Shown: piece by piece, positions 786 to 58,753 of the stretch | How the letters are laid out: each line of letters starts with the position of its first letter | Position numbering within the stretch: the stretch's first letter is position 1 | IMG/VR virus record: IMGVR_UViG_3300031857_000005 | Location: 240,366-304,365 of that record | Strand: one strand, 5' to 3' | Length of the DNA stretch: 64,000 nucleotides | Notes under the pieces: model-generated | The model's input: only the letters and a program-made list of their open reading frames with translations | What the model was told of the DNA's origin: nothing | Database searches by the model: none | Program-made: the position numbers and the translations under genes

Positions 786-811
786 AATCCCGACTTATGT
801 TGGGATTTTTT
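786..811 (+). terminator. Intrinsic terminator after nrdA
   Basis: AATCCCGAC-ttat-GTTGGGATT hairpin followed by a T run. Confidence 0.8.
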
Positions 812-836
812 ATTTATATAAAACTTCCCAACATTA

Positions 837-844
837 TATTTATT
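837..844 (+). promoter_or_regulatory. Putative late promoter TATTTAT(A/T) before the baseplate operon (second copy at 811-818)
   Basis: The same motif precedes nearly every structural transcription unit in the window. Confidence 0.6.
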
Positions 845-848
845 AGAT

Positions 849-1307
849 ATGGCAAATGGAGTAACATATGGAATAAATTTCCCCTTTCAAAATTCGTATG
901 TGGGAAAGTATTTAGATTGTTCTGATACAACAGATGAAGAAGTGAGGAGTAATCTTATTCATTTACTTTTAACAAGAAAAGGTACTAGGTATTTTTTACC
1001 TGATTTTGGTACTAGACTATATGAATATATTTTTGAACCATTGGATGGACCTACATTTTCGGAAATAGAATCAGAGATTAGAGATTCGGTATCAACTTAT
1101 ATGCCAGGTTTAACTGTTACTAATGTTAAAATAACAGATGCCTCAATGGAAGAAGAAAATAAAGGAACATACATAAATGGTGAGGATAAAAGAGAATATA
1201 CTGTCTCAAATATATCACAATTAGAACACACGGCAAAAATTAGAATTGATTATAAAACGACTAATACCGCTTTTGAATCAAGTGATTTTGTTATTATTAA
1301 TATTTAA
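849..1307 (+). CDS. Baseplate wedge protein, gp25/GPW-like
   Basis: VRSNLIHLLLTRKGTRYFLPDFGTRLYEYIFEP is the typical gp25 motif; first gene of the baseplate cluster. Confidence 0.9.
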   Translation: MANGVTYGINFPFQNSYVGKYLDCSDTTDEEVRSNLIHLLLTRKGTRYFLPDFGTRLYEYIFEPLDGPTFSEIESEIRDSVSTYMPGLTVTNVKITDASMEEENKGTYINGEDKREYTVSNISQLEHTAKIRIDYKTTNTAFESSDFVIINI

Positions 1308-1313
1308 TAGTAT

Positions 1314-3152
1314 ATGGCAAATAAAAAAATATCGTACACAACGAGAGATTTTCAGGGGATAAGAACTGAGTTAATAAATTTTACAAGAACTTATTATCCT
1401 GATTTAGTTCAGAATTTTAATGATGCTGGAATATTTTCGGTAATGTTAGACTTAAATGCCGCAGTAACCGACAACCTACATTTTAATATTGATAGAAGTA
1501 TCCAAGAAACCGTATTACAATACGCACAACAAAAATCATCAATCTATAATATTGCAAGAACTTATGGTTTAAAAATACCTGGGTTGAGACCTTCAGTTGC
1601 ATTGGTTGACTTCTCAATTACAGTTCCTGCGTTTGGGGATAGAGAAGATTTAAGATATTGTGGTATTTTGAGAAGAGGTTCACAAGTTAATGGTGCTGGA
1701 CAACCTTTTGAAACTGTATATGATATTGATTTTGCATCGGCAATTAATGCTGAAGGATCACCAAATAGATTAAAAATACCTAATTTTGATGGTAGTGGTA
1801 AATTAGTTAACTATACAATTGTAAAAAGAGAAGTGGTAGTTAATGGAGTAACAAAAGTATTTAGAAGAGTTGTAACTCCAAATGATGTTAAACCATTCTT
1901 TGAACTTTTCTTACCTGAAAAAAATGTATTGGGAATCACAAGTGTATTATTAAAAGATGGTACACAATATTCTACGGTACCAAGTCCACAGGAGTTTTTA
2001 GGTTTAGAAAATAGATGGTATGAAGTACCTGCTTTAGTTGAGAATAGAGTGTTTATTGAAGACCCTACAAAGGTATCTGATCAACCAGGAGTTAAAGTCG
2101 GTAAATACATAACCACAGATAATAAATTAATTACTGAATATACACCTGAAGGGTTTATGAAATTAACTTTTGGTGGTGGTAATGTTTCTGCAGACGAACA
2201 ATTAAGAGATTTTGCAAGAAATGGATATCAATTAGATTTAAGTAAATATATTAATAATTTAGCTTTGGGTGCGGCTTTAAAATCTAACTCAACACTATTC
2301 ATACAATATAGAGTCGGTGGTGGACAAGGAACGAATTTAGGTGTTAATATTATAAATCAAATAGGTACCGTTTCATTTTATGTGAATGGACCGTCACAAT
2401 CCGTAAATACTACTGTTATTAATTCATTATCATGTAATAATGTTACTGCGGCAATTGGAGGGGCAAATGCTCCATCAACAGAAGAAGTTAGACAATATGT
2501 GACATATAATTTTGCCGCACAAAATAGAGCGGTAACTATAAATGATTATGAATCCATTTTAAGAAATATGCCGTCACAATTTGGGGCACCTGGTAAAGTT
2601 GCAATTACGGAAGAAAACAACAAAATTAAAATTAAAATGTTATCTTACGACGCTGAAGGTAAATTAACTGAAGTAATATCAAATACATTAAAAAATAATG
2701 TCGCCAATTACCTTTCTAATTATAGAATGATAAATGACTATATCTCAATTGAAACTGCAAATGTTATTGACTTAAGTGTTAATGTTGATGTAGTATTAGA
2801 TGCGAGTCAAAATCAAGGTGCGGTAGTTACTAAAATAATTGATATTATATCAAACTATTTTAGTCCATTACAAAGACAGATGGGTGAGAATGTTTATGTA
2901 TCCGAAATAAGACGATTAATTCAAAATGAAAATGGGGTTATTAGTATTTCCGATATAAGTTTTATTAATAATGTTGGAGGACAATATTCATCATCACAAA
3001 CATCACAACCTTACTCTGATTCGGCAACTAAAGAGATTGGATTAATTACTGACACTATATTTGCAGAACCAACTCAAATTTACCAAATTAGATATCCAAA
3101 TAAAGATATTAATGTTAGAGTTCTTAATTTAAAAACGGTGAATTTCTCTTGA
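1314..3152 (+). CDS. Baseplate wedge subunit, T4 gp6 / baseplate J-like
   Basis: N-terminal YTTRDFQGIRTELINF, then YRVGGG, GGANAPSTEEVR and AQNRAVTINDYE; follows the gp25-like gene. Confidence 0.88.
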   Translation: MANKKISYTTRDFQGIRTELINFTRTYYPDLVQNFNDAGIFSVMLDLNAAVTDNLHFNIDRSIQETVLQYAQQKSSIYNIARTYGLKIPGLRPSVALVDFSITVPAFGDREDLRYCGILRRGSQVNGAGQPFETVYDIDFASAINAEGSPNRLKIPNFDGSGKLVNYTIVKREVVVNGVTKVFRRVVTPNDVKPFFELFLPEKNVLGITSVLLKDGTQYSTVPSPQEFLGLENRWYEVPALVENRVFIEDPTKVSDQPGVKVGKYITTDNKLITEYTPEGFMKLTFGGGNVSADEQLRDFARNGYQLDLSKYINNLALGAALKSNSTLFIQYRVGGGQGTNLGVNIINQIGTVSFYVNGPSQSVNTTVINSLSCNNVTAAIGGANAPSTEEVRQYVTYNFAAQNRAVTINDYESILRNMPSQFGAPGKVAITEENNKIKIKMLSYDAEGKLTEVISNTLKNNVANYLSNYRMINDYISIETANVIDLSVNVDVVLDASQNQGAVVTKIIDIISNYFSPLQRQMGENVYVSEIRRLIQNENGVISISDISFINNVGGQYSSSQTSQPYSDSATKEIGLITDTIFAEPTQIYQIRYPNKDINVRVLNLKTVNFS

Positions 3153-3202
3153 TGATTTATTTTTAGAATAAAAGAATTATTTTTTGAAAATAGGAAATAA
3201 AC

Positions 3203-3210
3203 TATTTATC
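3203..3210 (+). promoter_or_regulatory. Putative late promoter (TATTTATC)
   Basis: Recurrent motif, 14 nt upstream of ATG 3225. Confidence 0.55.
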
Positions 3211-3224
3211 AAAAAAAGAATTTA

Positions 3225-6200
3225 ATGCCAAAATCATATAGAATTAGAACCGAGCCAGGTGTAGATAAATCCATAAAAATACAATTAGATCAGGATTTTG
3301 AATACTTGGAGATTTTATCTTTGAAGATATTTCAAAATGATATATACACTCGTATGTGTTCTGATTACGGTGTTGTTGTAGGTAGAGTATTAGTTAACGG
3401 AGGTTTTGGGGTACCAAACGCTAAAGTATCGGTGTTCATCCCAATAACTGACGAAGATGAACAAAACCCAATTATTTCTCAATTATATCCATATAAAAAC
3501 ATTGATGATTTAAATGACGATGGTTATAGATATAATTTATTACCTTATGAACCTTCATATCAAGGACATTCAGCAACAGGTACATTTCCAAGTAGAGAGG
3601 ATGTTTTAACCGATGCAGCATTAGTTGAGGTATACGACAAATATTATAAGTTTACTGTAAAAACAAATGAAAGTGGTGACTATATGATATTTGGGGTACC
3701 AACTGGAGAACAAACAATATTTATGGATGTTGATTTATCCGATATTGGGTGTTTCTCATTATCACCACAAGATTTAATTAACTCAGGATTAGCAACAGAA
3801 ACTCAAGTTGATGGGAACAAGTTCAAAACTTCAACCAACTTACGAGAATTACCACAAGTTAAAACATTAAATAAAATAGTTCAAGTACAACCATTATGGG
3901 GTGAACCTGAAATTTGTTTATTGGGTATCACAAGAGTTGATTTTGATTTAACGGCATCTGCTAATGTAAACATACAACCGACTTCTGTGTTTATGGGTTC
4001 AATGTTCTCAACAACAAATGAGGATGCGGTTAAGAAAAGTTGTAAACCAAAGATTAACACAGGAAATATGTGTGAACTAATTGCGGGTCCTGGACAAATA
4101 TTGGCAATTAGACAAACAATTAATACTGATGATAATGGATATCCTGTTCTTGAACAATATAGATTAGAACAGGATGGTAAGATAATTGATGGTGAGGGTA
4201 CTTGGTTGGTTAATTTACCAATGAATTTGGATTATGTAACAACAAATGAATTTGGTGAACAGGTATTATCTAACGATCCAAAAGTGGGAATACCAACCAC
4301 TTCAAAGTACAGATTTAAAATTAAGTGGCAAAACGAAGAGGGTTTGCAAAATAACTTTATGAGAGGTAACTATTTGGTACCTAATATTAAAGAACACGGA
4401 TGGAATAGTACTGATGAGAATAATGATCCATTTAAAAATTCTGATACATATACAAGTGAATATCAAGCGTCAATACCTGTTGGATCAACATCATTGTCTG
4501 TTGGACCAATACCTAGAGGGGGGTTCTTTCTTAATAGTGTGGTAAATACACAACAATTAACAATTGAAGTAAACGGAGTTCCATATTATGGTAGTTTGGA
4601 TAGTGTACCATTACCCAATGTCAACAATATAATTACATTTAATGCAATACCAATAGATAATACACAACCTATTGATATTGTGTTCACAATATATGACGAA
4701 CCACTATTTAACCTATTAAGATCTTACGCATTCAGTTTAGATTGGGATGATTATTATGATACTCAAGCGGCAATTGATTGTGAGGATAGTTTTTATAAAT
4801 TTCATTACAATAAAGTTTATACCGTAAGTTCATTTATTGATAGGTATAAAAATGGTAGCAATAGAGCCAGACATCTTGGGATTAAAGAAATTACAAATAG
4901 AACTTGTCAGAGTGAAAATAACAAATTACCTGTTAATGATTTAGTTAGGAATTTTGACTTCATATTCTTCTTATTCACTTTGTTACTTGCAATAGTATCA
5001 CCAATGATTGTTATTATAATAGTTGTAAATCACGTATTGGCATTAATATATCCAATAATAGTTGCAATAGCTAACTTTGTTATAAAATTAGTTAATGGTA
5101 TTGTTTATAACATATGTAAAATTGTTAAAAATTTAGGAGGTAATGTTGAATGTAAAAAAGAAACATTAGAACCAATGAGTGAAGATAACCCATTCAAAAG
5201 GTTATCATTACCAATGATGACATATCCTGATTGTGAGGCTTGTTCTTGTCCTGATGAGAGTTTGGTAACATCAAGTTCTGTTGCGGGTTCTTGGAATGCC
5301 GCGGCGTTAGGTATTAATATATCAATATTAAGTGATTTAGGTACTTTAGGTAGTTATAGTACTTGGACATTGAATCCCACAAACAATCCTTGCGGATTAA
5401 CCTTTTCCTCAACTCCGGACCAAACGGCTTGGGATCAAGGTTCTCAACAATTATTTGCTGGGGCAGTTAATCCCGCTAGAGTTTATTATAAAGTACCAAT
5501 ATGGGAGGAATTAGGTCCTGATGGTGCTAGTGCTAATTCGGGACAATTGTTTAAAAGATTTGGTGATGGTATGACATTGGCTCAATCAATGAACATGGCT
5601 AATCTTAGATCGAGATACTTTGATATTACCGCTAGAAACAGAATCACAGTAACACCAAACCCAACATTGGTTGGTACAACAACTTTAGGTGTTGGTGGTA
5701 ATTCATATCAAGATTTATCAATGATAATGTTAGCGGATCAGGGCACAATTAGTCAGTTAGTGGGTAAAGTAATTTCTTTTACTAATCCGGTGAATACTAA
5801 TGACTTTAATGTTACAGGTGGTACCGAAAATCAATTTGGGGGAAATGCAATAACAGGGACTACATTAGGGGTTGGCACATATACAGTACCTTTAACTTAT
5901 ATGAATGACTTAGGTGTTAATATAACATCAGATATAACTGTTGTTGGTACTGAAAGTGAAAAGGAATATTTATATAAATCAGGTATAGAGTATTTCCAAG
6001 TAGTTGCCGGATATACATGGGATGAACTTGTATCCACAGGTCCATTACAACCACAAGGTACCTATGTTGGATCAACAGTAACTAATTCAGGAGTGTTGTG
6101 GAAGTACTTCTTTCAAAATAAAATAAGCTATTTAAATCCAACGGCAAGTTCTCACACACCACCTTGGTTTTGGTTTAATGATTATCAACAACAAGAAATT

Positions 6201-12223: not shown

Positions 12224-12231
12224 TATTTATA
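12224..12231 (+). promoter_or_regulatory. Putative late promoter (TATTTATA)
   Basis: Recurrent motif in a short intergenic gap. Confidence 0.55.
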
Positions 12232-18754: not shown

Positions 18755-18762
18755 TATTTATA
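18755..18762 (+). promoter_or_regulatory. Putative late promoter (TATTTATA)
   Basis: Recurrent motif, 14 nt upstream of ATG 18777. Confidence 0.6.
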
Positions 18763-21884: not shown

Positions 21885-23101
21885 GTTTTATTTTTAATAA
21901 TCAAGTATCTTATAGTGACAGTGCAAATTTAGATGCATTTGGTAGGTTAAGAACTGCCGCAGTCCAAAATTTATTGGACATTAAACACGTATACGATAAA
22001 AATCCATTACAAGTAAATGAGGTTACCGCAGGAACTGCAACGTCAATTTTTAATCAACAATTTGCGAGAGTTAGAATGTCAACTGCGGCAAATAATGATT
22101 TAGTTATAAGACAATCAAAAACACACCCTATTTACCAACCAGGAAAAAGTCAATTATTCCAAGCAAGTTTCTCAAATTTTCAGTTAGAAACAAATGTCAT
22201 AAAAAGGGTGGGAGGATTCACCTCAACAACGGCATCTACATATAATTCGGTTTTTGATGGGTTCTTTTTAGAAAGTAATGGGGTAACAAACGAAATAAGT
22301 TTTCAAATATGGAGATCGGGAACTACGGTTTATAGTGCGGCAACAACCGTATGGAACACTAATGAATTTAACCCAATAGGTTTAGATTGGTCTAACACTA
22401 ATTTAATGTCAGTTGATTATCAATGGTTAGGTGTTGGTAGAATGAGATTTGGTTTGGATTTAGATGGAATATTAATTTATTTTACCGAACATAATTGTGC
22501 TAATAACGAACCAAATGTTTATATGTCATCACCAAATCAACCAATAAGGTATGAAATAAGACAAGTTGGTGTTGGTTCAGGAAGTTTTGATATGATATGT
22601 TCACAAGTATCAACCGAAGGAGCATTAAACGGACTATATTCCACTGTAGGAGTTATAAACTCAACCACTGCAGATTTAAATTCGTCAGGTACAAAATATC
22701 CATATATTGGTTATAGACTTAAACCAAGTTATAAATCAGTGACATCGCAATATAGTAGTTTGAGTATTTTAAATACCTCAAATGATAATTACTTAGTGAC
22801 TATTGAATTTAATCCTACATTATCTGCAACTCCAAGTTGGACAGATATACCAAATTCACCATTTCAATATTCAATATATAATGGGACTGTTACAACAACG
22901 ATAACATCACCAGGTCACATTATGTCGTCTTTAATTGGTGAATCAGGATCATCAGCACTTTCAACAATTAAAGTGGATGATAATCAAATTAGAGTTGGTT
23001 CTAATGTTGATGGAACACTTGATGAAATGTGGGTATGTATAACACCATTAAGTGCAAGTGCAACATTTTTGGGAACCGCAGAAGTATTATATTATTTATA
23101 A
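21881..23101 (+). CDS. Virion-associated beta-sandwich/lectin-like protein
   Basis: ATGA overlap puts the start at 21881. DAFGRLR, YQPGKSQ, DYQWLGVGRMRFG and PIRYEI motifs resemble a phage structural family. Confidence 0.6.
   Translation: MSFIFNNQVSYSDSANLDAFGRLRTAAVQNLLDIKHVYDKNPLQVNEVTAGTATSIFNQQFARVRMSTAANNDLVIRQSKTHPIYQPGKSQLFQASFSNFQLETNVIKRVGGFTSTTASTYNSVFDGFFLESNGVTNEISFQIWRSGTTVYSAATTVWNTNEFNPIGLDWSNTNLMSVDYQWLGVGRMRFGLDLDGILIYFTEHNCANNEPNVYMSSPNQPIRYEIRQVGVGSGSFDMICSQVSTEGALNGLYSTVGVINSTTADLNSSGTKYPYIGYRLKPSYKSVTSQYSSLSILNTSNDNYLVTIEFNPTLSATPSWTDIPNSPFQYSIYNGTVTTTITSPGHIMSSLIGESGSSALSTIKVDDNQIRVGSNVDGTLDEMWVCITPLSASATFLGTAEVLYYL
23093..23100 (+). promoter_or_regulatory. Putative late promoter (TATTTATA)
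   Basis: Recurrent motif upstream of ATG 23121. Confidence 0.5.
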
Positions 23102-24572: not shown

Positions 24573-24637
24573 TTCACTTTTTACAATACTATAATATCTT
24601 TATTTATAATTAATTTACTAAAAAATGGTAAGTTGAT

Positions 24638-24645
24638 TATTTATA
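24638..24645 (+). promoter_or_regulatory. Putative late promoter (TATTTATA; second copy 24601-24608)
   Basis: Recurrent motif upstream of ATG 24662. Confidence 0.55.
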
Positions 24646-26267: not shown

Positions 26268-26275
26268 TATTTATA
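26268..26275 (+). promoter_or_regulatory. Putative late promoter (TATTTATA)
   Basis: 6 nt upstream of ATG 26282. Confidence 0.6.
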
Positions 26276-30771: not shown

Positions 30772-30822
30772 TTACTATTGTTATCTTAGATAAATATAAA
30801 GGAATGTAAAAACTTGTGAAGT

Positions 30823-32615: not shown

Positions 32616-32632
32616 ATTAATTTAATTATAAT
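32604..32632 (+). promoter_or_regulatory. Sigma70-consensus (putative middle) promoter
   Basis: TTGAAA-N17-TATAAT, 5 nt before ATG 32638. Confidence 0.55.
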
Positions 32633-38705: not shown

Positions 38706-39613
38706 ATGAAGTAATTTTAGGTAATGCGATTGAAGTATTACAAAGATATGAGGATAATACATTTGATTTAACTGTAACATCACCACCGTATGATAACTTA
38801 AGAACTTATAATGGAAAAATTAAGGATGAGGTTGTCTTTGAAGATGGATTTAGTTTCCCATTTGTGGAAATGGCTCGTGAGTTATATAGAGTAACCAAGA
38901 AGGGTGGTGTTGTTATTTGGGTGGTAAATGATCAAGTAAAAAATGGTGGAGAAACTGGTAGTTCATTCAGACAAGCACTTAAATTTAAGGAGATTGGATT
39001 TACATTGTACGATACGATGATTTATCATAAGAATGGAGCCCCATTTCCTGAAACAGGTAGATACTCACAAGTATTTGAATATATGTTCGTCCTTTCAAAA
39101 GGGAAACCAAAAACGGTTAATCTATTAAAAGATAAACCAAATAGATGGGCGGGACATAGTAATTTTGGTGATCCATCAAAAAGAGAAAAAGACGGAAACC
39201 TTAAAAAGGTTGACAAGTTTGTTGTATCTGAATTCGGTACAAGGTATAATGTATGGTATGTTAATAATGGTAAAGGGTTCTCATCCAAAGACGACATTGC
39301 ATTCCAACATCCTGCAATATTTCCGGAATCATTGGCTGAGGATCATATTCTATCTTGGAGTAATGAAGGTGATATAGTATTAGATCCTATGTGTGGTAGT
39401 GGAACGACATTGAAGATGGCGAAACTTAATAACAGGAATTATTTGGGTATTGACATCAATGAAGAATATGTCGATTTATCAAATCTAAGAATACAAAATA
39501 TTGAACCATACACTAATGAAACACCTAATCCAAAGGTTAAATTCCTTTTATCTAAAGAAGATGCTTTATTGAAAAGAAAAAATAATAAAGAATCTAAAAA
39601 TTTGTTGGATTAA
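38702..39613 (+). CDS. DNA methyltransferase, N4/N6 family beta class (SPPY, probably N4-cytosine)
   Basis: TSPPY, then HPAIFP and VLDPMCGSGTT. Confidence 0.92.
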   Translation: MNEVILGNAIEVLQRYEDNTFDLTVTSPPYDNLRTYNGKIKDEVVFEDGFSFPFVEMARELYRVTKKGGVVIWVVNDQVKNGGETGSSFRQALKFKEIGFTLYDTMIYHKNGAPFPETGRYSQVFEYMFVLSKGKPKTVNLLKDKPNRWAGHSNFGDPSKREKDGNLKKVDKFVVSEFGTRYNVWYVNNGKGFSSKDDIAFQHPAIFPESLAEDHILSWSNEGDIVLDPMCGSGTTLKMAKLNNRNYLGIDINEEYVDLSNLRIQNIEPYTNETPNPKVKFLLSKEDALLKRKNNKESKNLLD

Positions 39614-39631
39614 TAATTATTTGTATATTTG
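39601..39631 (+). promoter_or_regulatory. Bacteroidota-type (host sigma, early) promoter
   Basis: TTTG-N19-TATATTTG upstream of 39645 and the sigma gene. Confidence 0.7.
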
Positions 39632-40186: not shown

Positions 40187-40987
40187 ATGAAGGAAAAAGG
40201 AACAGGAATGCCCATTAATCAGGATGAAATCTCTCACTACCTAAAGGATATTAGGAAGATTAAAGTTATGACACCTGAAAGGGAAAAAGAATTATCTAAA
40301 CTTATGATGTCGGATACTTTAACTGACAAACAACGAAAACAAGTTGAACAGGAGTTGTTAACAGGTAATTTACGATTTGTTATTACCGTTGCAAAACAAT
40401 ATCAAAATCAAGGTTTGGATTTTCCTGATTTGGTTGCTGAGGGTAACTTAGGGTTATTGAAAGCAATTAAAAACTTTGATTGGAGTAAAAATTTGAGATT
40501 TATTTCATATGCCGTTTGGTGGGTTAAACAATCTATTATTCAGTCTTTAAATGACAATGCGAGAACAATTAGACTTCCTGTAAATGTTGTTCAGGAACTT
40601 CATAAAGCTAAAAAAGAAATTGAGAATAATGGAGGAAAACTATCGGATAAATTCTCATCTTTACCATCAATGATTGACTTAGATATGAATATCAATGATG
40701 AGGGAGATACATTCCTTGATATGATACCAAATATGGATGCAGACGCTCCTGATGCGGCTTTTAATACTGCGGACATTCTTAAAGAAAAATTAATCAATAC
40801 ACTTAGTGTTTTAGATGAAAGAGAACGAGTAATTATTGAGGATTATTTTGGACTTAGTGGAACACCAAGAACTTTGGAAGATATTGGAGGTGATTTTGGT
40901 TTAACTAAAGAACGAGTAAGACAGATTAAAGAAAGAGCTTTGAGAAGGTTACGAAATGAGAGTTCTGAATTATTTGATTATATCTAA
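40187..40987 (+). CDS. RNA polymerase sigma70 factor, Bacteroidota primary-sigma-like (no region 1.1)
   Basis: NLRFVITVAKQYQNQGL, EGNLGL, FISYAVWW, RTIRLP, TLEDIG...TKERVRQIKE. Confidence 0.93.
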   Translation: MKEKGTGMPINQDEISHYLKDIRKIKVMTPEREKELSKLMMSDTLTDKQRKQVEQELLTGNLRFVITVAKQYQNQGLDFPDLVAEGNLGLLKAIKNFDWSKNLRFISYAVWWVKQSIIQSLNDNARTIRLPVNVVQELHKAKKEIENNGGKLSDKFSSLPSMIDLDMNINDEGDTFLDMIPNMDADAPDAAFNTADILKEKLINTLSVLDERERVIIEDYFGLSGTPRTLEDIGGDFGLTKERVRQIKERALRRLRNESSELFDYI

Positions 40988-42085: not shown

Positions 42086-42093
42086 TATTTATT
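42086..42093 (+). promoter_or_regulatory. Putative late promoter (TATTTATT) for the membrane/lysis cluster
   Basis: Recurrent motif immediately after a terminator. Confidence 0.55.
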
Positions 42094-46104: not shown

Positions 46105-46129
46105 CGATATTTATTATAAAAACACAATT

Positions 46130-47479
46130 ATGAAAAGTAACACTTATTACGATAATTTATTTAGAAAAGTTCTAACCGAAACTTTAGAAGGAAAGGCTGA
46201 TGAGATAATGGAAAAATTAAAATTTAATCCTCCAGGGAAATCGTTTGACTATGTCCAAGAAGGAGAAACTTGTGAATGTGGAGGTGAAATGAAAGAAGGT
46301 GAATGTATGGAATGTGGATACATGAATGAAGAGATGAAAGAAAGTAGGTATGTTACATCCAAAGGAGGTAAATTCCCTAACGAAAAAAAGGAATTATCAA
46401 GACAAGATTCTGAATGGACTATGCCAGGATTTGATATGGAAGAATACTGTGCTCAATATTACGATATGGATCCTGAAAGATGTCAATCATATTATGATCA
46501 AAAAGAATATAATGATAATAGAGGTGAAATCGATGAAAGACTTCATGGTAAACAATCTCGTTTGGATAAAAACAAAAATGGAAGAATAGATTCGGAAGAT
46601 TTTAGATTACTTAGAAAAAAAGGAAAAAATACGGAAATGGAAGAAGGCAACGCATTTTCAGGAGCTCTTGCCAATGCTAAAAAAGAAGGTAAATCTCATT
46701 TTTCTGTTGATGGTAAAAAATATACTGTTAAAGAAAGTAAAAGACAAAATGATAATGGTGTTTTATATAAATTAGAATACATTAATGAAACCGCATTGTT
46801 TACTGAAGATGAAATAATAGATATTATTGAGGGTATTATTAAAGAAGAAAGTAAAACAAAAAATACGATTAAAACAGGTAAAACACCTGCAGGGTATATG
46901 GCATATGAAAAGTCACATAAAGGTTCGGGAAAAGAAGAAGATGACTATATGAAAAGTTTTGAGAAGAAAATGAAAGATTATCTTAAAGACGGATCTAAAG
47001 GTAAGTATGAAATGAATCCTAAACATTTTCCTATGGGTAATGGTGAAATTGAAAAAATGGAAAAAATGGCTTATGTACCATCAAATGCTGTACAGGATTA
47101 TGTAGATAACTTTACCGCCGCAGCATTAGAAAACTTAGACTTCAATGATGGGATAGCTCCAAATGAGGATTGGATGACAGATAACATTGAAGGTTCATCT
47201 AGAACGGGTAATAACCCTGAATGGGCAAATGCGGTTGAAACACCAACAAACAAGAAAAGAAACAAAATAAGAAAAGATAATTTACTTGGTAAACTAAAAA
47301 GAAAGGCATATAATAAATCTGTACAACCAGTAGTTTCAGATAAAACAGGTAATGAAACAGATAAAGCAAGTAAAGTTATGATGAAACTTGAATCAGTTGA
47401 AAACAAAAAAATTGAAAAACTTAATGAGGAGTTCGATAGAATGAAGTCGTTGATTGGTTATCAAGATAAGACACAATAA
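46130..47479 (+). CDS. Putative head-internal / scaffold-like protein
   Basis: Late motif at 46108; RKVLTE leader; CECGG..CMECG; EF-hand-like LDKNKNGRIDSEDF; MEEGNAF; C-terminal LNEEFDRMKSLIGY. Confidence 0.55.
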   Translation: MKSNTYYDNLFRKVLTETLEGKADEIMEKLKFNPPGKSFDYVQEGETCECGGEMKEGECMECGYMNEEMKESRYVTSKGGKFPNEKKELSRQDSEWTMPGFDMEEYCAQYYDMDPERCQSYYDQKEYNDNRGEIDERLHGKQSRLDKNKNGRIDSEDFRLLRKKGKNTEMEEGNAFSGALANAKKEGKSHFSVDGKKYTVKESKRQNDNGVLYKLEYINETALFTEDEIIDIIEGIIKEESKTKNTIKTGKTPAGYMAYEKSHKGSGKEEDDYMKSFEKKMKDYLKDGSKGKYEMNPKHFPMGNGEIEKMEKMAYVPSNAVQDYVDNFTAAALENLDFNDGIAPNEDWMTDNIEGSSRTGNNPEWANAVETPTNKKRNKIRKDNLLGKLKRKAYNKSVQPVVSDKTGNETDKASKVMMKLESVENKKIEKLNEEFDRMKSLIGYQDKTQ

Positions 47480-47526: not shown

Positions 47527-47991
47527 ATGGAGAATTTTTTTAATTATATAGCAAAACCAATGGATCCCGATGATGTGGACATATGGTTTAGAGTTAATAA
47601 TATAATACCTGAAAAAATGGATTTATATTATGACTTTAGTTTTTCATTATACTATTTGATTTTAGACACATATTTGGGTGACGACAAAAATAGTGAAACC
47701 AAAATAGTATTATCTGATGAAGATAATTTAAAACATTTTGAATGGTGTTGGAATAAAACAATTGAGAACTTTCAAAAAGAAGAAATTACTTTTAATAAAA
47801 AAGGGGATCATTATGAGTATTTCTTATCATTCTTCACTGACATATTCTATAATCAAAAGGAGAACAAAATAAAAAGTTCAATAGGAACATTCTTTAACGA
47901 CTTATTCGACAGGAAAAAACCTTTTACAAAATCTGATTTGGATATGATATCAAGTATATATAAATCATTAGATAAAAATATGTCAGTATAA
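47527..47991 (+). CDS. Hypothetical protein
   Basis: Aromatic-rich 154-aa ORF from ATG 47527. Confidence 0.65.
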   Translation: MENFFNYIAKPMDPDDVDIWFRVNNIIPEKMDLYYDFSFSLYYLILDTYLGDDKNSETKIVLSDEDNLKHFEWCWNKTIENFQKEEITFNKKGDHYEYFLSFFTDIFYNQKENKIKSSIGTFFNDLFDRKKPFTKSDLDMISSIYKSLDKNMSV

Positions 47992-48057
47992 TATTGACAT
48001 TAGAGTTAACTAATTTAGATTTATGATAATATAAATAAACTTTTTTTAATTAACAAA

Positions 48058-51050: not shown

Positions 51051-51536
51051 TTATTTTTGATAATAAATAATTATATCACCAATTATTTTATAAGTGAATG
51101 ATTGGTTAATAATTGATTCTCTTATCACAATATCATCATTTCTTGTTATTATAATCTCTCTAGTGTTAACATTATTGAATAATTTTTTTGGGTGACGGAT
51201 TGAGGTATTTATTGTTATTTTAAGATTATTATTTTTTATGTTGTAATGAGTAAATAATTGATAATCAAAACCTAAACGGTAATCACGAATCAATAATGCA
51301 CATTTATGTTTACAGGTATTAAATAAAATAAATGATTGATTAATTAAAACATCGTATATGTCCGACATTGAGTCCATGATTTCATCCGTTGGGACTCTAA
51401 TAAATTCACCACTACCGGTAATAGCTCGGAAAGATTCATAAGTTTGAACGATACTCAATGGTTGACCATTAATGGTAACATTTTTAATAGGAACACTCTC
51501 AACAATTATACTCTTAAGTAATGGTAATAAATTCAT
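51051..51536 (-). CDS. Hypothetical late protein with an LLKSIIVE leader
   Basis: ATG 51536 lies 6 nt after TATTTATA (minus strand, 51543-51550). Confidence 0.65.
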   Translation of the reverse strand: MNLLPLLKSIIVESVPIKNVTINGQPLSIVQTYESFRAITGSGEFIRVPTDEIMDSMSDIYDVLINQSFILFNTCKHKCALLIRDYRLGFDYQLFTHYNIKNNNLKITINTSIRHPKKLFNNVNTREIIITRNDDIVIRESIINQSFTYKIIGDIIIYYQK

Positions 51537-51551
51537 ATATAATATAAATAC

Positions 51552-51741: not shown

Positions 51742-51773
51742 ACTTTTGTAATCTTTTTTAAAAAAAATATTCA

Positions 51774-51802
51774 TTGACTGATTATCATAAATATCTTATA
51801 CT
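51774..51802 (+). promoter_or_regulatory. Sigma70-consensus promoter for the Dam-like MTase
   Basis: TTGACT-N17-TATACT, 6 nt before the ATG. Confidence 0.65.
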
Positions 51803-52648: not shown

Positions 52649-52697
52649 TTAATTTATTCATTTTTATTTATCGTAATATTTATAGTAAAAACATCAA

Positions 52698-54542
52698 ATG
52701 AAATTAGTAAAAATTTTATCATCGGTAATCGTAGAAAATGTTGATCCTAAATTTAGATTAACAGAAATATCAAATAAATTAATGAATCAACTTGTCCTTA
52801 AATTTAGTAACGAAACTAAAGATTCTGAGGATGATATTAAAAGTTATATTGGTGATTTTGATAAATATAAAAACGGATTACCTGCCGACAAACGAGACAT
52901 TACAAAATATACATATGATCAACTTAAGTCTGTGATTTTATCAAAAAGAGTTAAGAAGGAAGAAGGTGATATATTTAAAACCTATATGAAGGGTCCTGGT
53001 AAAGGTTCTGATCAAAGACAAGTTAAGTCTATGATTAAGAAATTCTTAGAGATAAGAAATTATCTACCTGAACCTAATAGGGATATTATGAGATACCCTT
53101 ATTTGAAGTTGGTTGAATTGATACAAAATAAATTTGGTGGAATTATTACCAAGGCGGCATTTGAAAAATATAAGAAAGAAAGAAACGATTTAACAAACGA
53201 GCAAATACTTTCTTACATTGAAAGATATGTTGATTTGTATGATAGATTGGAAGCAAATACGCCACCGATTATGTTAATGTCATTTGATGAGTTGGAGGCG
53301 GCATTGGATCATTTACCTGACGGAGATGATACACCAAAGAAAAAAGGTGACGACTTTAAAGATATTGAAACAATCTACGATAAAGATAATTTGTATATCT
53401 TCAAACCAAACGGTAAAGAACAATGTATTAGATTAGCACATGGAAGACCTTGGTGTACATCAAGAATTGGTGGTGGTAACTTATATTACAACTATCGTTT
53501 GGAAAATAACTTAACACTTTACTATGTTATTGACAGAGATACCCCATTTGATGATTTGAACTTCGCGGTTGTTATCTTGGTTGATGAGTATGGAAGAAAA
53601 AGAATTGCCGATGGTAAAAACATGGCTGGTGGATATTCAGGACACAGAACAGAGACTTGGGATACAATCTCATCTAAAGTTCCGAAGTTAAAAGACAAAG
53701 AATACTTATTTACTCCAGATCCACTTACTGATAGAGAAAAAGGATTATTAAGAAAATACAAACATATTAATGTTCAAGACGATGCAGTTAAAGAACTTGG
53801 TTCGGTTGAAGATGCTGAGTTTTGGTTAGAAATTGCAAGTCCAAACCTAACAAACAAACCAAGAGTTTATATTAATTTACCTTCAGAACTTAAAAAGAAA
53901 TATATTTCTTTGGGTATGGATTTAACAGGTGATATGATTACAAGTTCAGAACCTGATGTTGTTAAATATTATTTGGCAAGAAAGATTGATTCGTTGAGAA
54001 CCAAAACTTTAAATAATCTTACCACCGCGGATATTGCTTTGATTAATATGCCGGGAATGAAAAATCTTAAGGAAGAACTTAAGGTTAAATATGCCGGACA
54101 GTTGGCAACAGAAGGTGACAACATTGTTAAGATTACATACCCGAATGATGCGTCATCAAAATATATTGCATTGTTTGGTTTTGATGAATTATTTGAAAAT
54201 TTACCTGAAAGTATTACATATTTAACAATATCAAATAAATCAAACGATTCTCTTGATTTGGATATACCGGCAAGCATTGGTAAGTTTACAAATATAATAG
54301 CATTGGTACTTGAGAATTGTGTAAAATCACTACCTGAAGAATTAGGAAGAATGGAAGGATTAACATTCCTAACATTACAGAATAATAAAAATCTTCAAAG
54401 TCTACCTGAGTCTTTAGCGGATTTAGAGTATTTGGATCTTATTGCGTTATCGGGATCAAATCCAAGTGTTGTAATACCTGAAAGATTAAAGAATATGATG
54501 GTTGAAGAAGGTGATGGTTTTTACTATATTTCAAGAGACTAA
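52698..54542 (+). CDS. Late protein with a PcfJ-like (WC) domain and C-terminal leucine-rich repeats
   Basis: Late motif at 52677; ILSSVIVE leader; GRPWCTS...LYYVID; IPASIGKFTNI, LPEELGRMEGL and LPESLADLEYL LRRs. Confidence 0.7.
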   Translation: MKLVKILSSVIVENVDPKFRLTEISNKLMNQLVLKFSNETKDSEDDIKSYIGDFDKYKNGLPADKRDITKYTYDQLKSVILSKRVKKEEGDIFKTYMKGPGKGSDQRQVKSMIKKFLEIRNYLPEPNRDIMRYPYLKLVELIQNKFGGIITKAAFEKYKKERNDLTNEQILSYIERYVDLYDRLEANTPPIMLMSFDELEAALDHLPDGDDTPKKKGDDFKDIETIYDKDNLYIFKPNGKEQCIRLAHGRPWCTSRIGGGNLYYNYRLENNLTLYYVIDRDTPFDDLNFAVVILVDEYGRKRIADGKNMAGGYSGHRTETWDTISSKVPKLKDKEYLFTPDPLTDREKGLLRKYKHINVQDDAVKELGSVEDAEFWLEIASPNLTNKPRVYINLPSELKKKYISLGMDLTGDMITSSEPDVVKYYLARKIDSLRTKTLNNLTTADIALINMPGMKNLKEELKVKYAGQLATEGDNIVKITYPNDASSKYIALFGFDELFENLPESITYLTISNKSNDSLDLDIPASIGKFTNIIALVLENCVKSLPEELGRMEGLTFLTLQNNKNLQSLPESLADLEYLDLIALSGSNPSVVIPERLKNMMVEEGDGFYYISRD

Positions 54543-55677: not shown

Positions 55678-55684
55678 AAACAAC

Positions 55685-55707: not shown

Positions 55708-55712
55708 CTATT

Positions 55713-56054: not shown

Positions 56055-56055
56055 A

Positions 56056-56647: not shown

Positions 56648-56652
56648 AAAAT

Positions 56653-56681
56653 AAACCCCACCTTTTAGGATGGGGTTTTTT
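56653..56681. terminator. Bidirectional terminator between convergent genes
   Basis: AAACCCCA...TGGGGTTT with flanking A and T runs. Confidence 0.8.
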
Positions 56682-56682
56682 G

Positions 56683-57381
56683 TTAGAATAGAATTATATG
56701 TTCTAATAAATCTTGTTTAAGGTACGGTTTTTCACCATCAGGATTCAGGACATCATCAATTAAATTATAATCCGACAAACGCTCTCTAAATGAGTCCATA
56801 TTAAAATCAAATACATCAAGAATAAGTGACTTAATTGATTTCTTGTCAATTTTTGAGTCGGATATAATTTTAATTTTTAAATCTTCATTATTATCTTCCT
56901 CAGTGGTGAAATAAAATGATACTTCATTGACACCTAATAAATTAAACATATGGTTCATTATGTAATGTGAGTAATATGTGTTTAACCTTCCACAATCTAA
57001 ACTATAACCATATGGGAATTCTGATGAAATTGATATTTCTGAAATATCAGGTTCAGGTTCCTCAACAAAAATATCTTTCTTTACCATAACCCAACCCTTA
57101 TGAATTGTGTTTATATCCTGATTATATCTAACAACATCAATGGTATTAATATCTGACATTTCCAGCTCCTTCAGGGTATCACCAAAAGATTCCTTGAACT
57201 CATTTTTAATTTCGTTTATGTCTAAATACTCATTTGATGTTGTTAAACCATTAACAACCATAAATGCACCACAATCTGTGACTTGGATAATTGATTTTTC
57301 TGTTTTGTTGATTTTTGAGAGAATAAAGTCGGCAAATAAATTTACGATTCCTCTTTTTGAATTTTTGTTAATTAATCTCAT
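56683..57381 (-). CDS. Degenerate S-adenosylmethionine synthetase (MetK)-like protein: N- and C-domains only, catalytic motifs lost
   Basis: By-eye alignment to the MetK N-domain, the DRSAAY helix and the C-terminal FD..PW.K.D motif (see findings). Confidence 0.6.
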   Translation of the reverse strand: MRLINKNSKRGIVNLFADFILSKINKTEKSIIQVTDCGAFMVVNGLTTSNEYLDINEIKNEFKESFGDTLKELEMSDINTIDVVRYNQDINTIHKGWVMVKKDIFVEEPEPDISEISISSEFPYGYSLDCGRLNTYYSHYIMNHMFNLLGVNEVSFYFTTEEDNNEDLKIKIISDSKIDKKSIKSLILDVFDFNMDSFRERLSDYNLIDDVLNPDGEKPYLKQDLLEHIILF

Positions 57382-57433
57382 AACTATTAAATTTTTATAA
57401 TGTGTATGAAATTAAAACAACATTATAAATAGT

Positions 57434-58450
57434 TTAGTAATAAAGACGATCAGGTAACCCGTCATTGATATTCTCAACAACTTTTCTATTATCTGGATAG
57501 TCAGGAACCCTGATTCTTAAAAAATCATCACTATCGCCCATGTAATGGCGTAACATTGATGAGTAATCACCATATTCAAATAAAGTATCCTCATATCCAG
57601 CAAATGAATTTAAAAAATTCTCAATATCACTTTTAATGTTTTTAATTTTAATATAAGGTATATATACGGTTTTTAAACCGTTTTTGTTTTCAACCCAACT
57701 GTGCTTACCCTCAAAGTAAGTTGATAACTCATCAAATACCTCCGAGTACACTTCATCATTATATGCCTGATTGTAAGCCTCATCACCCAACCAACGAAAA
57801 CTATTCATCAAATCATTTAAATCACCTTTAAATAATGAATTCATAGAGTCCTCATCCTCAACAACAGACATCACATTTGATTCAGTAATGATAAATCTAC
57901 CATCGTCATCCGACATATCTCTAAACAATTCACTTTTATAATCATCTAAAGATAATTCTTGATTACCAACCAATTCTAAAACTCTCTCGGCTAATAATTT
58001 CATATTCTTTTCGTTAAGTTCTTCAACAATATCTTTATAAACATCGTAAACGGTATCACTATAAGGTTCCCACCAATCCTCATCTAAAACATTTTTTACA
58101 ATATCTCTATCGTTATATTCTCTTGAATACTGGTTGTCCTTAAAAAAATCGGATAACTCAGATAAGTCACTCAACATTAAATAATAACCATCACCACGAA
58201 TTTCAACATCACTTAAAAAACCCTGAACAATCTCGTTTAGATATGAAGGATCGTTTTGTAGGCGATATAACATCAACTCATTTACAAACCGTTCATCTTC
58301 GTAGTGTATACTATCTAAATCAAAATAATTTAAAAATCCTGCGCGTTTTACATAGGAATAAAATCTTTTTACATCACCTCCGAATACATCAGAGATATCA
58401 TCCCATTCACCATTATTGAATTTATTTACTAAATCTAAAACTTTTGACAT
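57434..58450 (-). CDS. Highly acidic late protein
   Basis: 338 aa, D/E-rich; TATTTATA lies 3 nt before the ATG (58454-58461, minus strand). Confidence 0.7.
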   Translation of the reverse strand: MSKVLDLVNKFNNGEWDDISDVFGGDVKRFYSYVKRAGFLNYFDLDSIHYEDERFVNELMLYRLQNDPSYLNEIVQGFLSDVEIRGDGYYLMLSDLSELSDFFKDNQYSREYNDRDIVKNVLDEDWWEPYSDTVYDVYKDIVEELNEKNMKLLAERVLELVGNQELSLDDYKSELFRDMSDDDGRFIITESNVMSVVEDEDSMNSLFKGDLNDLMNSFRWLGDEAYNQAYNDEVYSEVFDELSTYFEGKHSWVENKNGLKTVYIPYIKIKNIKSDIENFLNSFAGYEDTLFEYGDYSSMLRHYMGDSDDFLRIRVPDYPDNRKVVENINDGLPDRLYY

Positions 58451-58462
58451 ACCTATAAATAT

Positions 58463-58491
58463 AAAAAAAGGTGGAAACTTCCGTAACCACC
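58463..58491 (-). terminator. Intrinsic terminator
   Basis: GGTGG-TT-AC-GGAA-GT-TT-CCACC followed by T7 on the minus strand. Confidence 0.6.
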
Positions 58492-58516
58492 CATTAATTT
58501 CTTTGGTAGAAATAAA

Positions 58517-58663
58517 TTACCTCTTGTTATAATACTTCTCAACGATTTTTTTAACTGACTCTTGAACAGTGGCATTTTTTACTTGCTGTGGCTGTCCTTG
58601 AGCCGGTGCTTGTTGAGTAGCGGGAGTTCCACCATTGTTCTTATTTTTGCATCCACACCCCAT
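58517..58663 (-). CDS. Small 48-aa MGCGC peptide (not in ORF track)
   Basis: MGCGCKNKNNGGTPATQQAPAQGQPQQVKNATVQESVKKIVEKYYNKR; has its own late motif (58694-58701) and terminator. Confidence 0.7.
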   Translation of the reverse strand: MGCGCKNKNNGGTPATQQAPAQGQPQQVKNATVQESVKKIVEKYYNKR

Positions 58664-58693
58664 AGCTGATTGTTTTTATTAGGTTTATTTTCT

Positions 58694-58753
58694 TATAAAT
58701 ATCTTAATAGAATGTATTTTGTAAATAATTTTGGTATATCAATAATATTTATA
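58694..58753. promoter_or_regulatory. Divergent pair of late motifs
   Basis: TATTTATA on the minus strand (58694-58701) and on the plus strand (58746-58753). Confidence 0.6.

What the first reader, a model, noticed from the sequence alone, without database searches (positions are those of the whole stretch)
811..58753. Late promoter TATTTAT(A), the reverse complement of the T4 late promoter, often giving near-leaderless mRNAs
Seen: TATTTAT(A/T/C) lies on the coding strand just upstream of structural or head-type units. Plus-strand copies: 811/837, 3203, 12224, 18755, 23093, 24638, 26268, 42086, 46108, 52677, 58746. Minus-strand copies: 30789, 51543, 57424, 58454, 58694. It flips orientation with gene direction, and I did not see it before the primase, sigma, DnaJ, Dam or 60303 units. 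Several copies sit only 3-6 nt from the ATG. Known: the T4 gp55 late promoter is TATAAATA on the coding strand. Inference: a distinct late-sigma specificity. The motif also predicts which hypothetical genes are late or virion genes. Caveat: the genome is very AT-rich.
Basis: partly seen in the sequence, partly recalled or inferred. Interest (0 to 1): 0.6.

Follow-up and report, generated by a model that had tools for sequence, protein, structure and literature searches.

The report
Phage late-type promoter motif TATTTAT
A strict seven-base signal, TATTTAT, sits just upstream of about a quarter of the genes of this 304-kb uncultured lake phage and of its relatives. It is most likely the phage's own T4-style late promoter with two central bases changed, read by a phage sigma factor distantly related to T4 gp55.

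Summary
The whole-window count of TATTTAT is at chance (59 vs 57). In DNA just upstream of genes, read in the gene's direction, it is the commonest 7-mer of the genome: 107 copies against 16-29 expected. In co-directional spacers the split is 82 sense to 17 antisense. No single-mismatch variant shows any strand bias. There is no -35-like box. A quarter of the copies directly follow a terminator hairpin. The motif and its spacing are kept upstream of orthologous genes in related contigs. It also recurs in distant relatives of 38-53% GC and, with long Shine-Dalgarno leaders, in the cultured Microcystis phage Mel-JY01.

The phage belongs to the T4 superfamily (gp23-type capsid protein) and encodes no RNA polymerase. 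It has two sigma-like genes: an RpoD-like one in the window, and outside it a divergent one whose sigma-2 domain resembles T4 gp55. In T4's register, TATTTATA equals TATAAATA except at -10 and -9.

Best reading: a -10-only late-type promoter for this sigma. Spacing peaks at 4-6 and 14-16 nt predict leaderless or 8-10-nt-leader mRNAs. No transcript data exist, so timing, start sites and the sigma assignment are inferred.

The parts
811..817 (+). TATTTAT copy directly after a terminator-like hairpin, 31 nt before the ATG at 849 (first of two copies)
837..843 (+). TATTTAT 5 nt before the ATG of the gp25-like baseplate wedge gene 849-1307. A second baseplate wedge gene, 1314-3152, follows after a 6-nt gap.
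3203..3209 (+). TATTTAT 15 nt before the ATG of the 1754-aa gene 3225-8489
12224..12230 (+). TATTTAT in the spacer, 35 nt before the GTG of ORF 12266-13174
18755..18761 (+). TATTTAT 15 nt before gene 18777-21884. The next gene, 21881-23101, is a PHROG 'virion structural protein'.
23093..23099 (+). TATTTAT overlapping the stop of the preceding gene, 21 nt before gene 23121-24572
24601..24644 (+). Two TATTTAT copies (24601-24607 and 24638-24644), 54 and 17 nt before gene 24662-26248.
26268..26274 (+). TATTTAT 7 nt before gene 26282-28720
30790..30796 (-). TATTTAT 18 nt before the minus-strand gene 30550-30771. It is antisense to the primase gene 30859-31758.
42086..42092 (+). TATTTAT after a terminator hairpin, 18 nt before gene 42111-43199
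46108..46114 (+). TATTTAT 15 nt before gene 46130-47479
51544..51550 (-). TATTTAT following a GC-rich hairpin and T-run visible in the sequence, 7 nt before the minus-strand gene 51051-51536
51787..51793 (-).
52665..52683 (+). Two TATTTAT copies (52665-52671 and 52677-52683), 26 and 14 nt before gene 52698-54542
57425..57431 (-). TATTTAT 43 nt before the minus-strand gene 56683-57381
58455..58461 (-). TATTTAT after a terminator hairpin, 4 nt before the ATG of the minus-strand gene 57434-58450
58695..58701 (-). TATTTAT 31 nt before the small minus-strand ORF 58517-58663, in a divergent spacer
58746..58752 (+). TATTTAT 5 nt before the ATG of gene 58758-60266, in the same divergent spacer but facing the other way
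40187..40987 (+). RpoD-like phage sigma factor (regions 1.2, 2 and 4). It has no TATTTAT upstream.
39601..39631 (+). Host-type Bacteroidota promoter (TTTG, 19-nt spacer, TATATTTG) 13 nt before gene 39645-40181. That gene heads the two-gene unit containing the RpoD-like sigma.

Best explanation
TATTTAT, in full [T/G]A-TATTTAT-[A/T], is the core and probably the only sequence-specific element of a phage-specific promoter class in a T4-superfamily jumbo phage of a Bacteroidota host. It is a -10-like box on the non-template strand with no -35 partner.

The phage has no RNA polymerase of its own. The host core enzyme is therefore most likely redirected to these sites by a phage sigma factor. The best candidate is the 248-aa protein at genome position 152654-153400 (minus strand, outside the window), whose N-terminal domain is a sigma-2 domain resembling T4 gp55.

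In the T4 register (-13 to -6) the motif keeps T-13, A-12, T-11, A-8, T-7 and A-6 of TATAAATA. It swaps A-10 and A-9 for T.

The class drives most recognisable virion and packaging genes, many unknown genes, and a few replication genes. It is therefore a late, or middle-plus-late, class. Transcription is predicted to start a few bases after the box. This would give leaderless or almost leaderless mRNAs at the 4-6-nt sites and 8-10-nt A-rich leaders at the 14-16-nt sites, which fits a host that does not use Shine-Dalgarno pairing.

Shown here: enrichment, orientation, strictness, conservation, the sigma-like fold, and the lack of a detectable RNA polymerase gene. Inferred: promoter activity, start sites, timing, and which sigma reads the motif.
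For: Enrichment, orientation and strictness:
- 107 sense copies against 16-29 expected.
- 82 sense to 17 antisense in co-directional spacers.
- All 21 single-mismatch variants are unbiased between strands, so all seven positions are near invariant, as in T4 late promoters.
- The logo shows no -35-like element, and A-rich positions lie 4-6 nt downstream.

Need for re-initiation:
- 25 of 107 copies directly follow a terminator-like hairpin plus T-run, against 7 of 102 motif-less spacers.
- At divergent junctions, where a promoter must exist, 23 of 64 first genes carry the motif.

Conservation:
- In 80 related IMG/VR loci it is again the top oriented 7-mer, 297 against 110.
- Upstream of orthologues of two genes, the box and its 4-nt or 14-16-nt spacing persist while the flanks drift.
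- In distant relatives that carry the same sigma-like family, the only TATTTAT in 10 kb (L112) and in 20.7 kb (L109), both 53% GC, is intergenic and sense. The figures are 4 of 6 in a 38% GC marine contig and 2 of 4 in a 45% GC contig.
- In Microcystis phage Mel-JY01 the first 50 kb have 12 sense and 1 antisense copy. They lie 14-45 nt upstream of structural genes, with GGAG between box and ATG, so the box is not a translation signal.

The reader protein:
- Weak but convergent sequence hits: Sigma70_r2 at E 0.007; the gp55 family phrog_234 at E 1.5e-4; T4 gp55 as the top PDB hit; a profile search hitting only sigma factors.
- A confident model (pLDDT 91) whose residues 25-147 align to gp55 at Z 10.8, rmsd 4.0 A, 116 residues, and to sigma-2 domains at rmsd 2.6-3.0 A.
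- gp55 flips A-12, A-9 and A-8 into pockets (PMC7892883). In the alignment the -12 stacking Tyr is kept (Y97 ~ Y108, 96% conserved in the family). The -9 pocket residues differ (H95 ~ Y106, N13 ~ E29).

Other points:
- No RpoB, RpoC or T7-type RNA polymerase was found.
- The capsid protein matches Pfam Gp23 at E 2e-64.
- 8 of 9 annotated virion or packaging genes are served by the motif.
- A separate TTGACA-N17-TATAAT class (15 sense, 1 antisense) can account for the RpoD-like sigma.
Against: - There are no transcript data. No sequencing run held the stretch as RNA.
- Sequence similarity of the candidate sigma to gp55 is marginal (E 1e-4 to 0.1). For helical proteins a Z near 11 is not decisive on its own.
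- That protein has an extra C-terminal, sigma-4-like domain that gp55 lacks, yet no -35 box is seen.
- T4's partners gp33 and gp45, and a DnaN-type clamp, were not detected.
- The motif also precedes a DnaB-like helicase, a homing endonuclease with ribonucleotide reductase behind it, and a kinase-like gene. The portal gene has only a one-mismatch copy (TACTTAT).
- With T4's start site, six bases after the 8-mer, the 4- and 5-nt sites would start inside or after the ATG. The geometry must therefore differ, or those start codons are wrong.
- Most motif-bearing proteins have no PHROG match, so 'virion' is unverified for them.
Confidence: 0.7

Rival explanations
1. The motif is a promoter, but it is read by the RpoD-like sigma encoded in the window (40187-40987) or by a modified host sigma, not by the gp55-like protein.
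For: - The RpoD-like sigma is a clear sigma-70 family member (Pfam regions 1.2, 2 and 4).
- It is apparently expressed early, from a host-type promoter.
- The gp55 similarity of the other candidate is weak.
- The upstream part of the extended motif, [T/G]ATATT, resembles a TATAAT-type hexamer.
Against: - A full-length RpoD-like sigma would be expected to use a -35 box, and none accompanies TATTTAT.
- A separate class with canonical TTGACA-N17-TATAAT architecture exists and suits this sigma better: 15 sense, 1 antisense, shuffles 4.4 +/- 2.1.
- The motif travels with the gp55-like family into distant and GC-rich relatives. I did not test whether those relatives also have an RpoD-like sigma.
Confidence: 0.2
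2. The motif marks a general phage-specific promoter class (middle and late together) rather than a strictly late, virion-gene class.
For: - About 99 of roughly 410 genes carry it, including many small genes at 37-100 kb.
- It also precedes a DnaB-like helicase, a homing endonuclease with ribonucleotide reductase behind it, and a kinase-like gene.
- The association with structural genes is only borderline (p = 0.05).
Against: - 8 of 9 recognisable virion or packaging genes use it.
- The core replication genes (DNA polymerase, primase, SbcCD, UvsX-like) do not.
- The first 36 kb of small, early-looking genes almost lack it and carry host-type promoters instead.
Confidence: 0.3
3. The motif acts in RNA, either as an AU-rich ribosome-loading or translation signal for a host without Shine-Dalgarno pairing, or as a cleavage site for an endoribonuclease that trims polycistronic mRNAs just upstream of ORFs.
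For: - The spacing to the start codon is tight and bimodal, at 4-6 and 14-16 nt.
- Many copies lie inside operons, in spacers of only 12-25 nt.
Against: - In Mel-JY01 the same box lies 14-45 nt upstream, with a normal GGAG ribosome site between it and the ATG.
- A quarter of the copies directly follow terminators, and many stand at divergent junctions where no upstream transcript on that strand is expected.
- Bona fide host-type promoters (with a -33 box) show the same 4-nt and 13-16-nt spacing, so the spacing reflects leader length, not the motif.
- Seven invariant positions suit protein-DNA recognition better than an AU-rich RNA element.
Confidence: 0.07
4. The pattern is a by-product of AT-rich spacers or of duplicated gene families carrying their upstream DNA along.
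For: - The spacers are 24% GC.
- The whole-window count is at chance.
- About 17 of the short-spacing genes belong to one paralogous family.
Against: - Markov models trained on the spacers expect 16-29 copies, not 107.
- Equally AT-rich one-mismatch variants show no excess or strand bias.
- The flanks of paralogue copies are not alike.
- In 53% GC relatives the single copy present is intergenic and sense.
Confidence: 0.02

Closest known systems
Bacteriophage T4 late promoter TATAAATA, read by gp55 with gp33 and the gp45 sliding clamp
   Same: - A single, very strict 8-bp -10-like box with no -35 element.
- It lies just upstream of virion genes, in a phage with a gp23-type capsid protein and no RNA polymerase of its own.
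- A sigma-2-only style of recognition is plausible.
- 6 of 8 bases are identical in the same orientation and register, including A-12 and A-8, which gp55 flips into pockets (PMC7892883).
   Different: - The bases at -10 and -9 are T, not A.
- The candidate sigma is 248 aa with an added C-terminal sigma-4-like domain.
- gp33 and gp45 homologues were not detected.
- Many boxes lie only 4-6 nt from the ATG, which T4's start-site geometry would not allow.
Bacteroidota primary-sigma promoters (-33 TTTG, -7 TAnnTTTG)
   Same: - Same host group, and the same very short or absent leaders.
- Both begin with TA and are T-rich.
- The phage itself carries about 38 such promoters, mostly in early-looking regions and before its RpoD-like sigma.
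   Different: - TATTTAT ends in TAT(A), not TTTG.
- It has no -33 box.
- Only 5 genes carry both motifs.
Group 2 jumbo phages of Iyer et al. 2021 (PMC7824862): gp23-type capsid, family B polymerase, no RNA polymerase, a minimal sigma and/or an RpoD-like sigma
   Same: The gene complement matches: a gp23-like capsid protein, family B DNA polymerase, UvsX-like protein, no RNA polymerase, and both kinds of sigma.
   Different: In the passages of that review that I read, no promoter consensus for these phages is given. The review reports a gp33 orthologue in group 2, which I could not detect here.
Sigma cascades of large lytic phages, such as Bacillus phage SPO1 gp28 then gp33/34 (from general knowledge)
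   Same: Successive phage sigmas redirect the host core enzyme to promoter classes that differ from the host consensus. Three classes are visible here too.
   Different: The SPO1 sigmas use two-box promoters. Here the presumed late class has one box. The cascade order here is inferred only from which promoter type precedes which gene.

Membership tests
T4-type (gp55-dependent) late promoter | Consensus TATAAATA on the non-template strand | tested here: not met
   The consensus here is TATTTAT(A/T). Sense TATAAATA is not enriched beyond antisense copies of TATTTATA. Six of eight positions agree.
T4-type (gp55-dependent) late promoter | A single -10-like box with no -35 element | tested here: met
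   The logo of 107 sites shows no conserved position from -45 to -3.
T4-type (gp55-dependent) late promoter | The phage encodes a gp55-family sigma (sigma-2 homology domain) | tested here: met
   The protein at genome 152654-153400(-) gives phrog_234 E 1.5e-4, T4 gp55 as top PDB sequence hit, and a structural match to 7d7c_F at Z 10.8, rmsd 4.0 A over 116 residues. Sequence support is weak, and the protein has an extra C-terminal domain.
T4-type (gp55-dependent) late promoter | gp33 co-activator present | tested here: inconclusive
   phrog_254 gives only a noise-level hit (E 0.01) inside the FtsH-like gene. A divergent small protein could be missed.
T4-type (gp55-dependent) late promoter | Phage sliding clamp (gp45) as activator | tested here: inconclusive
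   There is no match to phrog_223 or to Pfam DNA_pol3_beta. Divergent clamps or use of the host clamp cannot be excluded.
T4-type (gp55-dependent) late promoter | Late, replication-coupled timing, with the start site 6 nt after the box | not testable with these tools
   No RNA run holds the sequence.
Bacteroidota primary-sigma promoter | -7 box TAnnTTTG with -33 TTTG | tested here: not met
   TATTTAT sites lack both elements. Only 5 of 99 motif genes also have TAnnTTTG.
Canonical sigma-70 promoter | TTGACA, 17-nt spacer, TATAAT | tested here: not met
   TATTTAT has no -35 partner. The canonical architecture forms a separate class of about 15 sites.
T4 superfamily of phages | gp23-type major capsid protein and T4-like core genes | tested here: met
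   Pfam Gp23 E 1.8e-64; 1,811 T4-like records matched by tblastn; gp25- and gp6-like baseplate wedge, tail sheath, SbcCD (gp46/47-like) and UvsX-like genes.

The most novel reading that the evidence does not exclude
A whole, mostly uncultured branch of the T4 superfamily has switched its late-promoter code from TATAAATA to TATTTATA. The branch includes 300-kb lake and marine phages of Bacteroidota and the cultured Microcystis phage Mel-JY01. The switch would have come from remodelling the -9/-10 pocket of a gp55-like sigma. That sigma has gained a sigma-4-like domain and works without gp33 or a clamp. In the Bacteroidota-infecting members many late mRNAs are truly leaderless. These promoters form the last tier of a three-sigma cascade: host TAnnTTTG, then TTGACA/TATAAT read by a phage RpoD-like sigma, then TATTTATA.
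Probability: 0.3. Interest if true: 0.7.

Novelty: new variant of a known kind. Interest (0 to 1): 0.55.

Why it matters
- A simple, strict and testable promoter code would let late or virion genes be predicted in a very large family of uncultured jumbo phages whose proteins mostly have no annotation. The sigma-like family alone has more than 1,100 clusters at 50% identity.
- It offers a natural specificity variant for studying how gp55-type sigmas read single-stranded -10 DNA. Two central bases change, while the residues aligned to gp55's -9 pocket differ and the -12 stacking tyrosine is kept.
- It suggests how phages of Bacteroidota, whose hosts use an unusual promoter code and no Shine-Dalgarno pairing, organise a sigma cascade and short-leader or leaderless expression.
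- Mel-JY01 on Microcystis gives a cultured system in which to test all this.

Tried and rejected
I therefore did not use read laying, and no start site could be mapped.
- tblastn of the window ORF 24662-26248 against GenBank phages found nothing. Its IMG/VR relatives were only near-identical contigs.
- The GC-rich family members P0146 and P0152 had no IMG/VR relatives. The record behind L110 is not held. The GC-rich test therefore rests on a few contigs.
- I tried to follow a possible sigma-70-like promoter upstream of the operon holding the gp55-like gene into relatives. No orthologous spacers were found.
- PHROG scans left most motif-driven proteins unannotated, so the 'virion gene' prediction could be checked on only nine genes.
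- I considered and rejected a phage RNA polymerase promoter (no polymerase genes) and an AT-richness artefact.
- My gene list is a simple longest-ORF call, not a trained gene finder. A few tiny ORFs, and the small ORFs it calls over the tRNA cluster, are probably spurious. They inflate the 'no motif' counts at divergent junctions.

Full report
**What the sequence is.** The window is the last 64 kb of a 304,365-bp IMG/VR virus record that CheckV rates as complete. It came from lake water and has about 31% GC. The phage belongs to the T4 superfamily:
- Its capsid protein matches Pfam Gp23 at E 1.8e-64 and 1,811 T4-like records.
- It has gp25- and gp6-like baseplate wedge proteins, a tail sheath, a large terminase, a portal, SbcCD, a UvsX-like protein, a family B DNA polymerase, primase and DnaB.
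- No RpoB, RpoC or T7-type RNA polymerase was found.

This matches the 'group 2' jumbo phages of Iyer et al. (PMC7824862). Upstream regions carry no Shine-Dalgarno motifs. Many carry the Bacteroidota promoter TTTG-N19-TAnnTTTG, so the host is very probably a member of Bacteroidota.

**Checking the observation.** All listed copies exist. The total in the window (59) equals the shuffle expectation (57), so composition alone explains the count. It does not explain the placement.

I called genes with a simple longest-ORF rule, which gave 410 genes covering 94% of the genome. I then collected the non-coding DNA upstream of each gene in the gene's orientation: 254 spacers, 17,066 nt, 24% GC.
- TATTTAT is the commonest 7-mer there, with 107 sense and 42 antisense copies. 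ATATTTAT and TATTTATA are the commonest 8-mers.
- Markov models trained on these spacers expect 16 +/- 4 (order 1) or 29 +/- 6 (order 3).
- In co-directional spacers the split is 82 sense to 17 antisense. The antisense copies in divergent spacers are the sense copies of the opposite gene.
- In the window alone, 18 sense copies lie in 2,310 nt of spacer, a 27-fold higher density than elsewhere.
- None of the 21 one-mismatch variants shows any excess or strand bias. All seven positions are effectively invariant.
- The logo adds a preferred A, preceded by T or G, before the box, and A or T after it. It shows no -35-like element and an A-rich patch 4-6 nt downstream.

**Is it a promoter?** Four lines of evidence say yes.
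1. 25 of 107 copies lie directly behind a GC-rich hairpin plus T-run, against 7 of 102 motif-less spacers. Transcription must restart there.
2. At divergent junctions, where a promoter is obligatory, 23 of 64 first genes have the box and 13 have a host-type promoter.
3. The box is conserved.
   - In 80 related IMG/VR loci it is again the top oriented 7-mer, 297 against 110.
   - Upstream of orthologues of two genes, the box and its spacing are kept while the flanking spacer sequence changes.
   - In distant carriers of the same sigma-like family with higher GC, the box is rare, and where it does occur it is usually intergenic and sense. The only copy in 10 kb and the only copy in 20.7 kb (both 53% GC) fit this. 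So do 4 of 6 copies in a 38% GC marine contig and 2 of 4 in a 45% GC contig.
4. In the first 50 kb of the cultured Microcystis phage Mel-JY01 there are 12 sense copies and 1 antisense copy in 1.8 kb of spacer. This phage's capsid protein is 42% identical to the one here. The copies precede structural-region genes, including the tail tube gene. They lie 14-45 nt from the ATG, with a GGAG ribosome site in between. That separates the box from any translational role. It also shows that the very short leaders are a feature of the Bacteroidota-infecting members.

**Spacing and leaders.** The gap between the box and the start codon peaks at 4-6 nt (about 30 genes) and 14-16 nt (29 genes). The 14-16 class continues as TATTTAT-A-n-(T/A)-AAAA. 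With T4's geometry, where the start site is six bases after the 8-mer, transcription would begin in that A-run and give 8-10-nt leaders. For the 4-6 class, only the 6-nt spacing would include the AUG under that geometry. Either initiation is one or two bases closer here, or some start codons are miscalled. The phage's host-type promoters, which do have a -33 box, show the same peaks: 4 nt in nine cases and 13-16 nt in five. Zero or roughly 10-nt leaders therefore look like a general property of this phage-host system.

**Who reads it?** Two sigma-like genes exist.
- *RpoD-like sigma, window 40187-40987.* It has Pfam regions 1.2, 2 and 4 and is about 36% identical to bacterial RpoD. It follows a host-type promoter.
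- *gp55-like protein, genome 152654-153400, minus strand, outside the window, 248 aa.*
  - It gives weak but convergent sequence hits: Sigma70_r2 (E 0.007), the gp55 family phrog_234 (E 1.5e-4 in the genome search), and T4 gp55 as the best PDB sequence hit.
  - A profile of 80 family members hits only sigma factors in the PDB. hhalign against gp55 gives E 2e-4.
  - The AlphaFold model (pLDDT 91) matches only sigma factors in Foldseek. In VIA-align it matches gp55 at Z 10.8, rmsd 4.0 A, 116 residues, and sigma-2 domains at rmsd 2.6-3.0 A. Whole-length alignments to full sigmas suggest an additional sigma-4-like C-terminal domain.
  - The family is very large: more than 7,900 close proteins and 1,159 clusters at 50% identity.

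gp55 recognises TATAAATA by flipping A-12, A-9 and A-8 into pockets (PMC7892883). TATTTATA in the same register keeps A-12 and A-8 and changes -10 and -9. In the alignments, the Tyr that stacks on A-12 is conserved (Y97 ~ Y108). The -9 pocket residues differ (H95 ~ Y106, N13 ~ E29). This correspondence is suggestive only.

A third promoter class, TTGACA-N17-TATAAT, has 15 sense hits against 1 antisense, with shuffles giving 4.4 +/- 2.1. It precedes the DNA polymerase and other replication-type genes, and it is the natural target for the RpoD-like sigma. I therefore favour the gp55-like protein as reader of TATTTAT, but I have not shown it. gp33, gp45 and DnaN homologues were not detected.

**Which genes?** Walking upstream to the nearest promoter-like signal, 8 of 9 annotated virion or packaging genes are served by TATTTAT. 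These are two baseplate wedge proteins, two virion structural proteins, terminase, capsid, adaptor-like protein and tail sheath. The portal gene has a one-mismatch TACTTAT, a variant that also replaces the box in some orthologous spacers. A DnaB-like helicase, a homing endonuclease with the ribonucleotide reductase behind it, and a kinase-like gene are. The first 36 kb of small genes almost lack the box. The contrast is in the expected direction but only borderline in this small sample (Fisher p = 0.05).

**Comparison with what is known, and novelty.** It works like a T4 late promoter, but it fails the defining consensus test. Its presumed sigma differs in architecture, and the T4 co-factors were not found. 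I therefore file it as a new variant of a known kind, not as a member. Searches of the paper library for the motif together with phage, promoter or late genes found nothing relevant. No paper on Mel-JY01 is held. Absence from this library is not proof that the motif has never been described.

**Verdict.**
- The promoter reading is well supported by sequence evidence (about 0.8).
- The late timing, the leaderless mRNAs and the gp55-like reader are plausible inferences (about 0.5-0.6 each) that need transcript mapping or biochemistry.

Noticed in passing
window 39601-39631; genome-wide list: The phage carries about 38 host-type Bacteroidota promoters (TTTG, roughly 19-nt spacer, TAnnTTTG; 38 sense, 22 antisense). 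They lie mostly in the first 36 kb of small genes and before the unit with the RpoD-like sigma. Nine of them end exactly 4 nt before the ATG, which predicts leaderless early mRNAs.
   Followed up: partly
window about 32600-32632, 47990-48021, 51770-51802 and 60265-60295; genome 81634, 99714, 200402 (DNA polymerase), 232088: A third promoter class has the canonical sigma-70 layout, TTGACA-N17-TATAAT. With two or fewer mismatches there are 15 sense hits and 1 antisense; shuffles give 4.4 +/- 2.1. Both perfect matches in the genome are intergenic. From general knowledge, Bacteroidota hosts do not read this consensus. The phage's RpoD-like sigma may serve it as a middle class.
   Followed up: partly
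window 58758-60266 and about 16 other genes across genome 12-122 kb: Many genes with the box 4-6 nt from the ATG share N-termini of the type MK(K)IIITE.Q or M.L.E.IR.ILREE. This looks like a multigene family with a common N-terminal signal ending in an (I/L)xE motif. That is reminiscent, from memory, of T4 capsid-targeting sequences cut by the prohead protease.
   Followed up: no
window 60734-64000 versus genome 1-3269: The first 3.3 kb and the last 3.3 kb of the record are direct repeats at only 80.5% identity. This may be a diverged terminal repeat, a duplicated gene module, or two strain variants joined at the ends of the assembly.
   Followed up: partly
genome 102.9-114.7 kb (loci L096, L097), outside the window: ARAGORN calls a cluster of 24 tRNA genes there, one of them with an unassigned anticodon, plus a doubtful tmRNA call at about 120.2-120.6 kb. 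My ORF caller places small spurious ORFs over this region.
   Followed up: partly
genome 132372-132441 (portal gene upstream spacer); loci L041, L043, L047, L051, L052: The variant TACTTAT(A) replaces TATTTAT before the portal gene and, in some relatives, in the spacer before the gene that follows the gp55-like gene. It may be a tolerated weaker form of the box.
   Followed up: no
L123 (Microcystis phage Mel-JY01, PP395634, 1-50000): This cultured cyanophage is a distant relative. It has TATTTAT(A/G)T before about ten structural-region genes, with normal Shine-Dalgarno leaders, and it encodes a weak homologue of the gp55-like protein at 158791-159342.
   Followed up: partly
genome 143-172 kb, minus strand: A 37-gene minus-strand block holds several glycosyltransferases and two nucleotide-sugar epimerases together with the gp55-like gene. 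A glycosyltransferase directly upstream of the sigma-like gene is conserved in distant relatives.
   Followed up: no
genome 122555-124612, minus strand: The genome encodes an FtsH-like ATP-dependent protease (phrog_4871, E 6e-236). A TAnnTTTG box lies 133 nt upstream.
   Followed up: no
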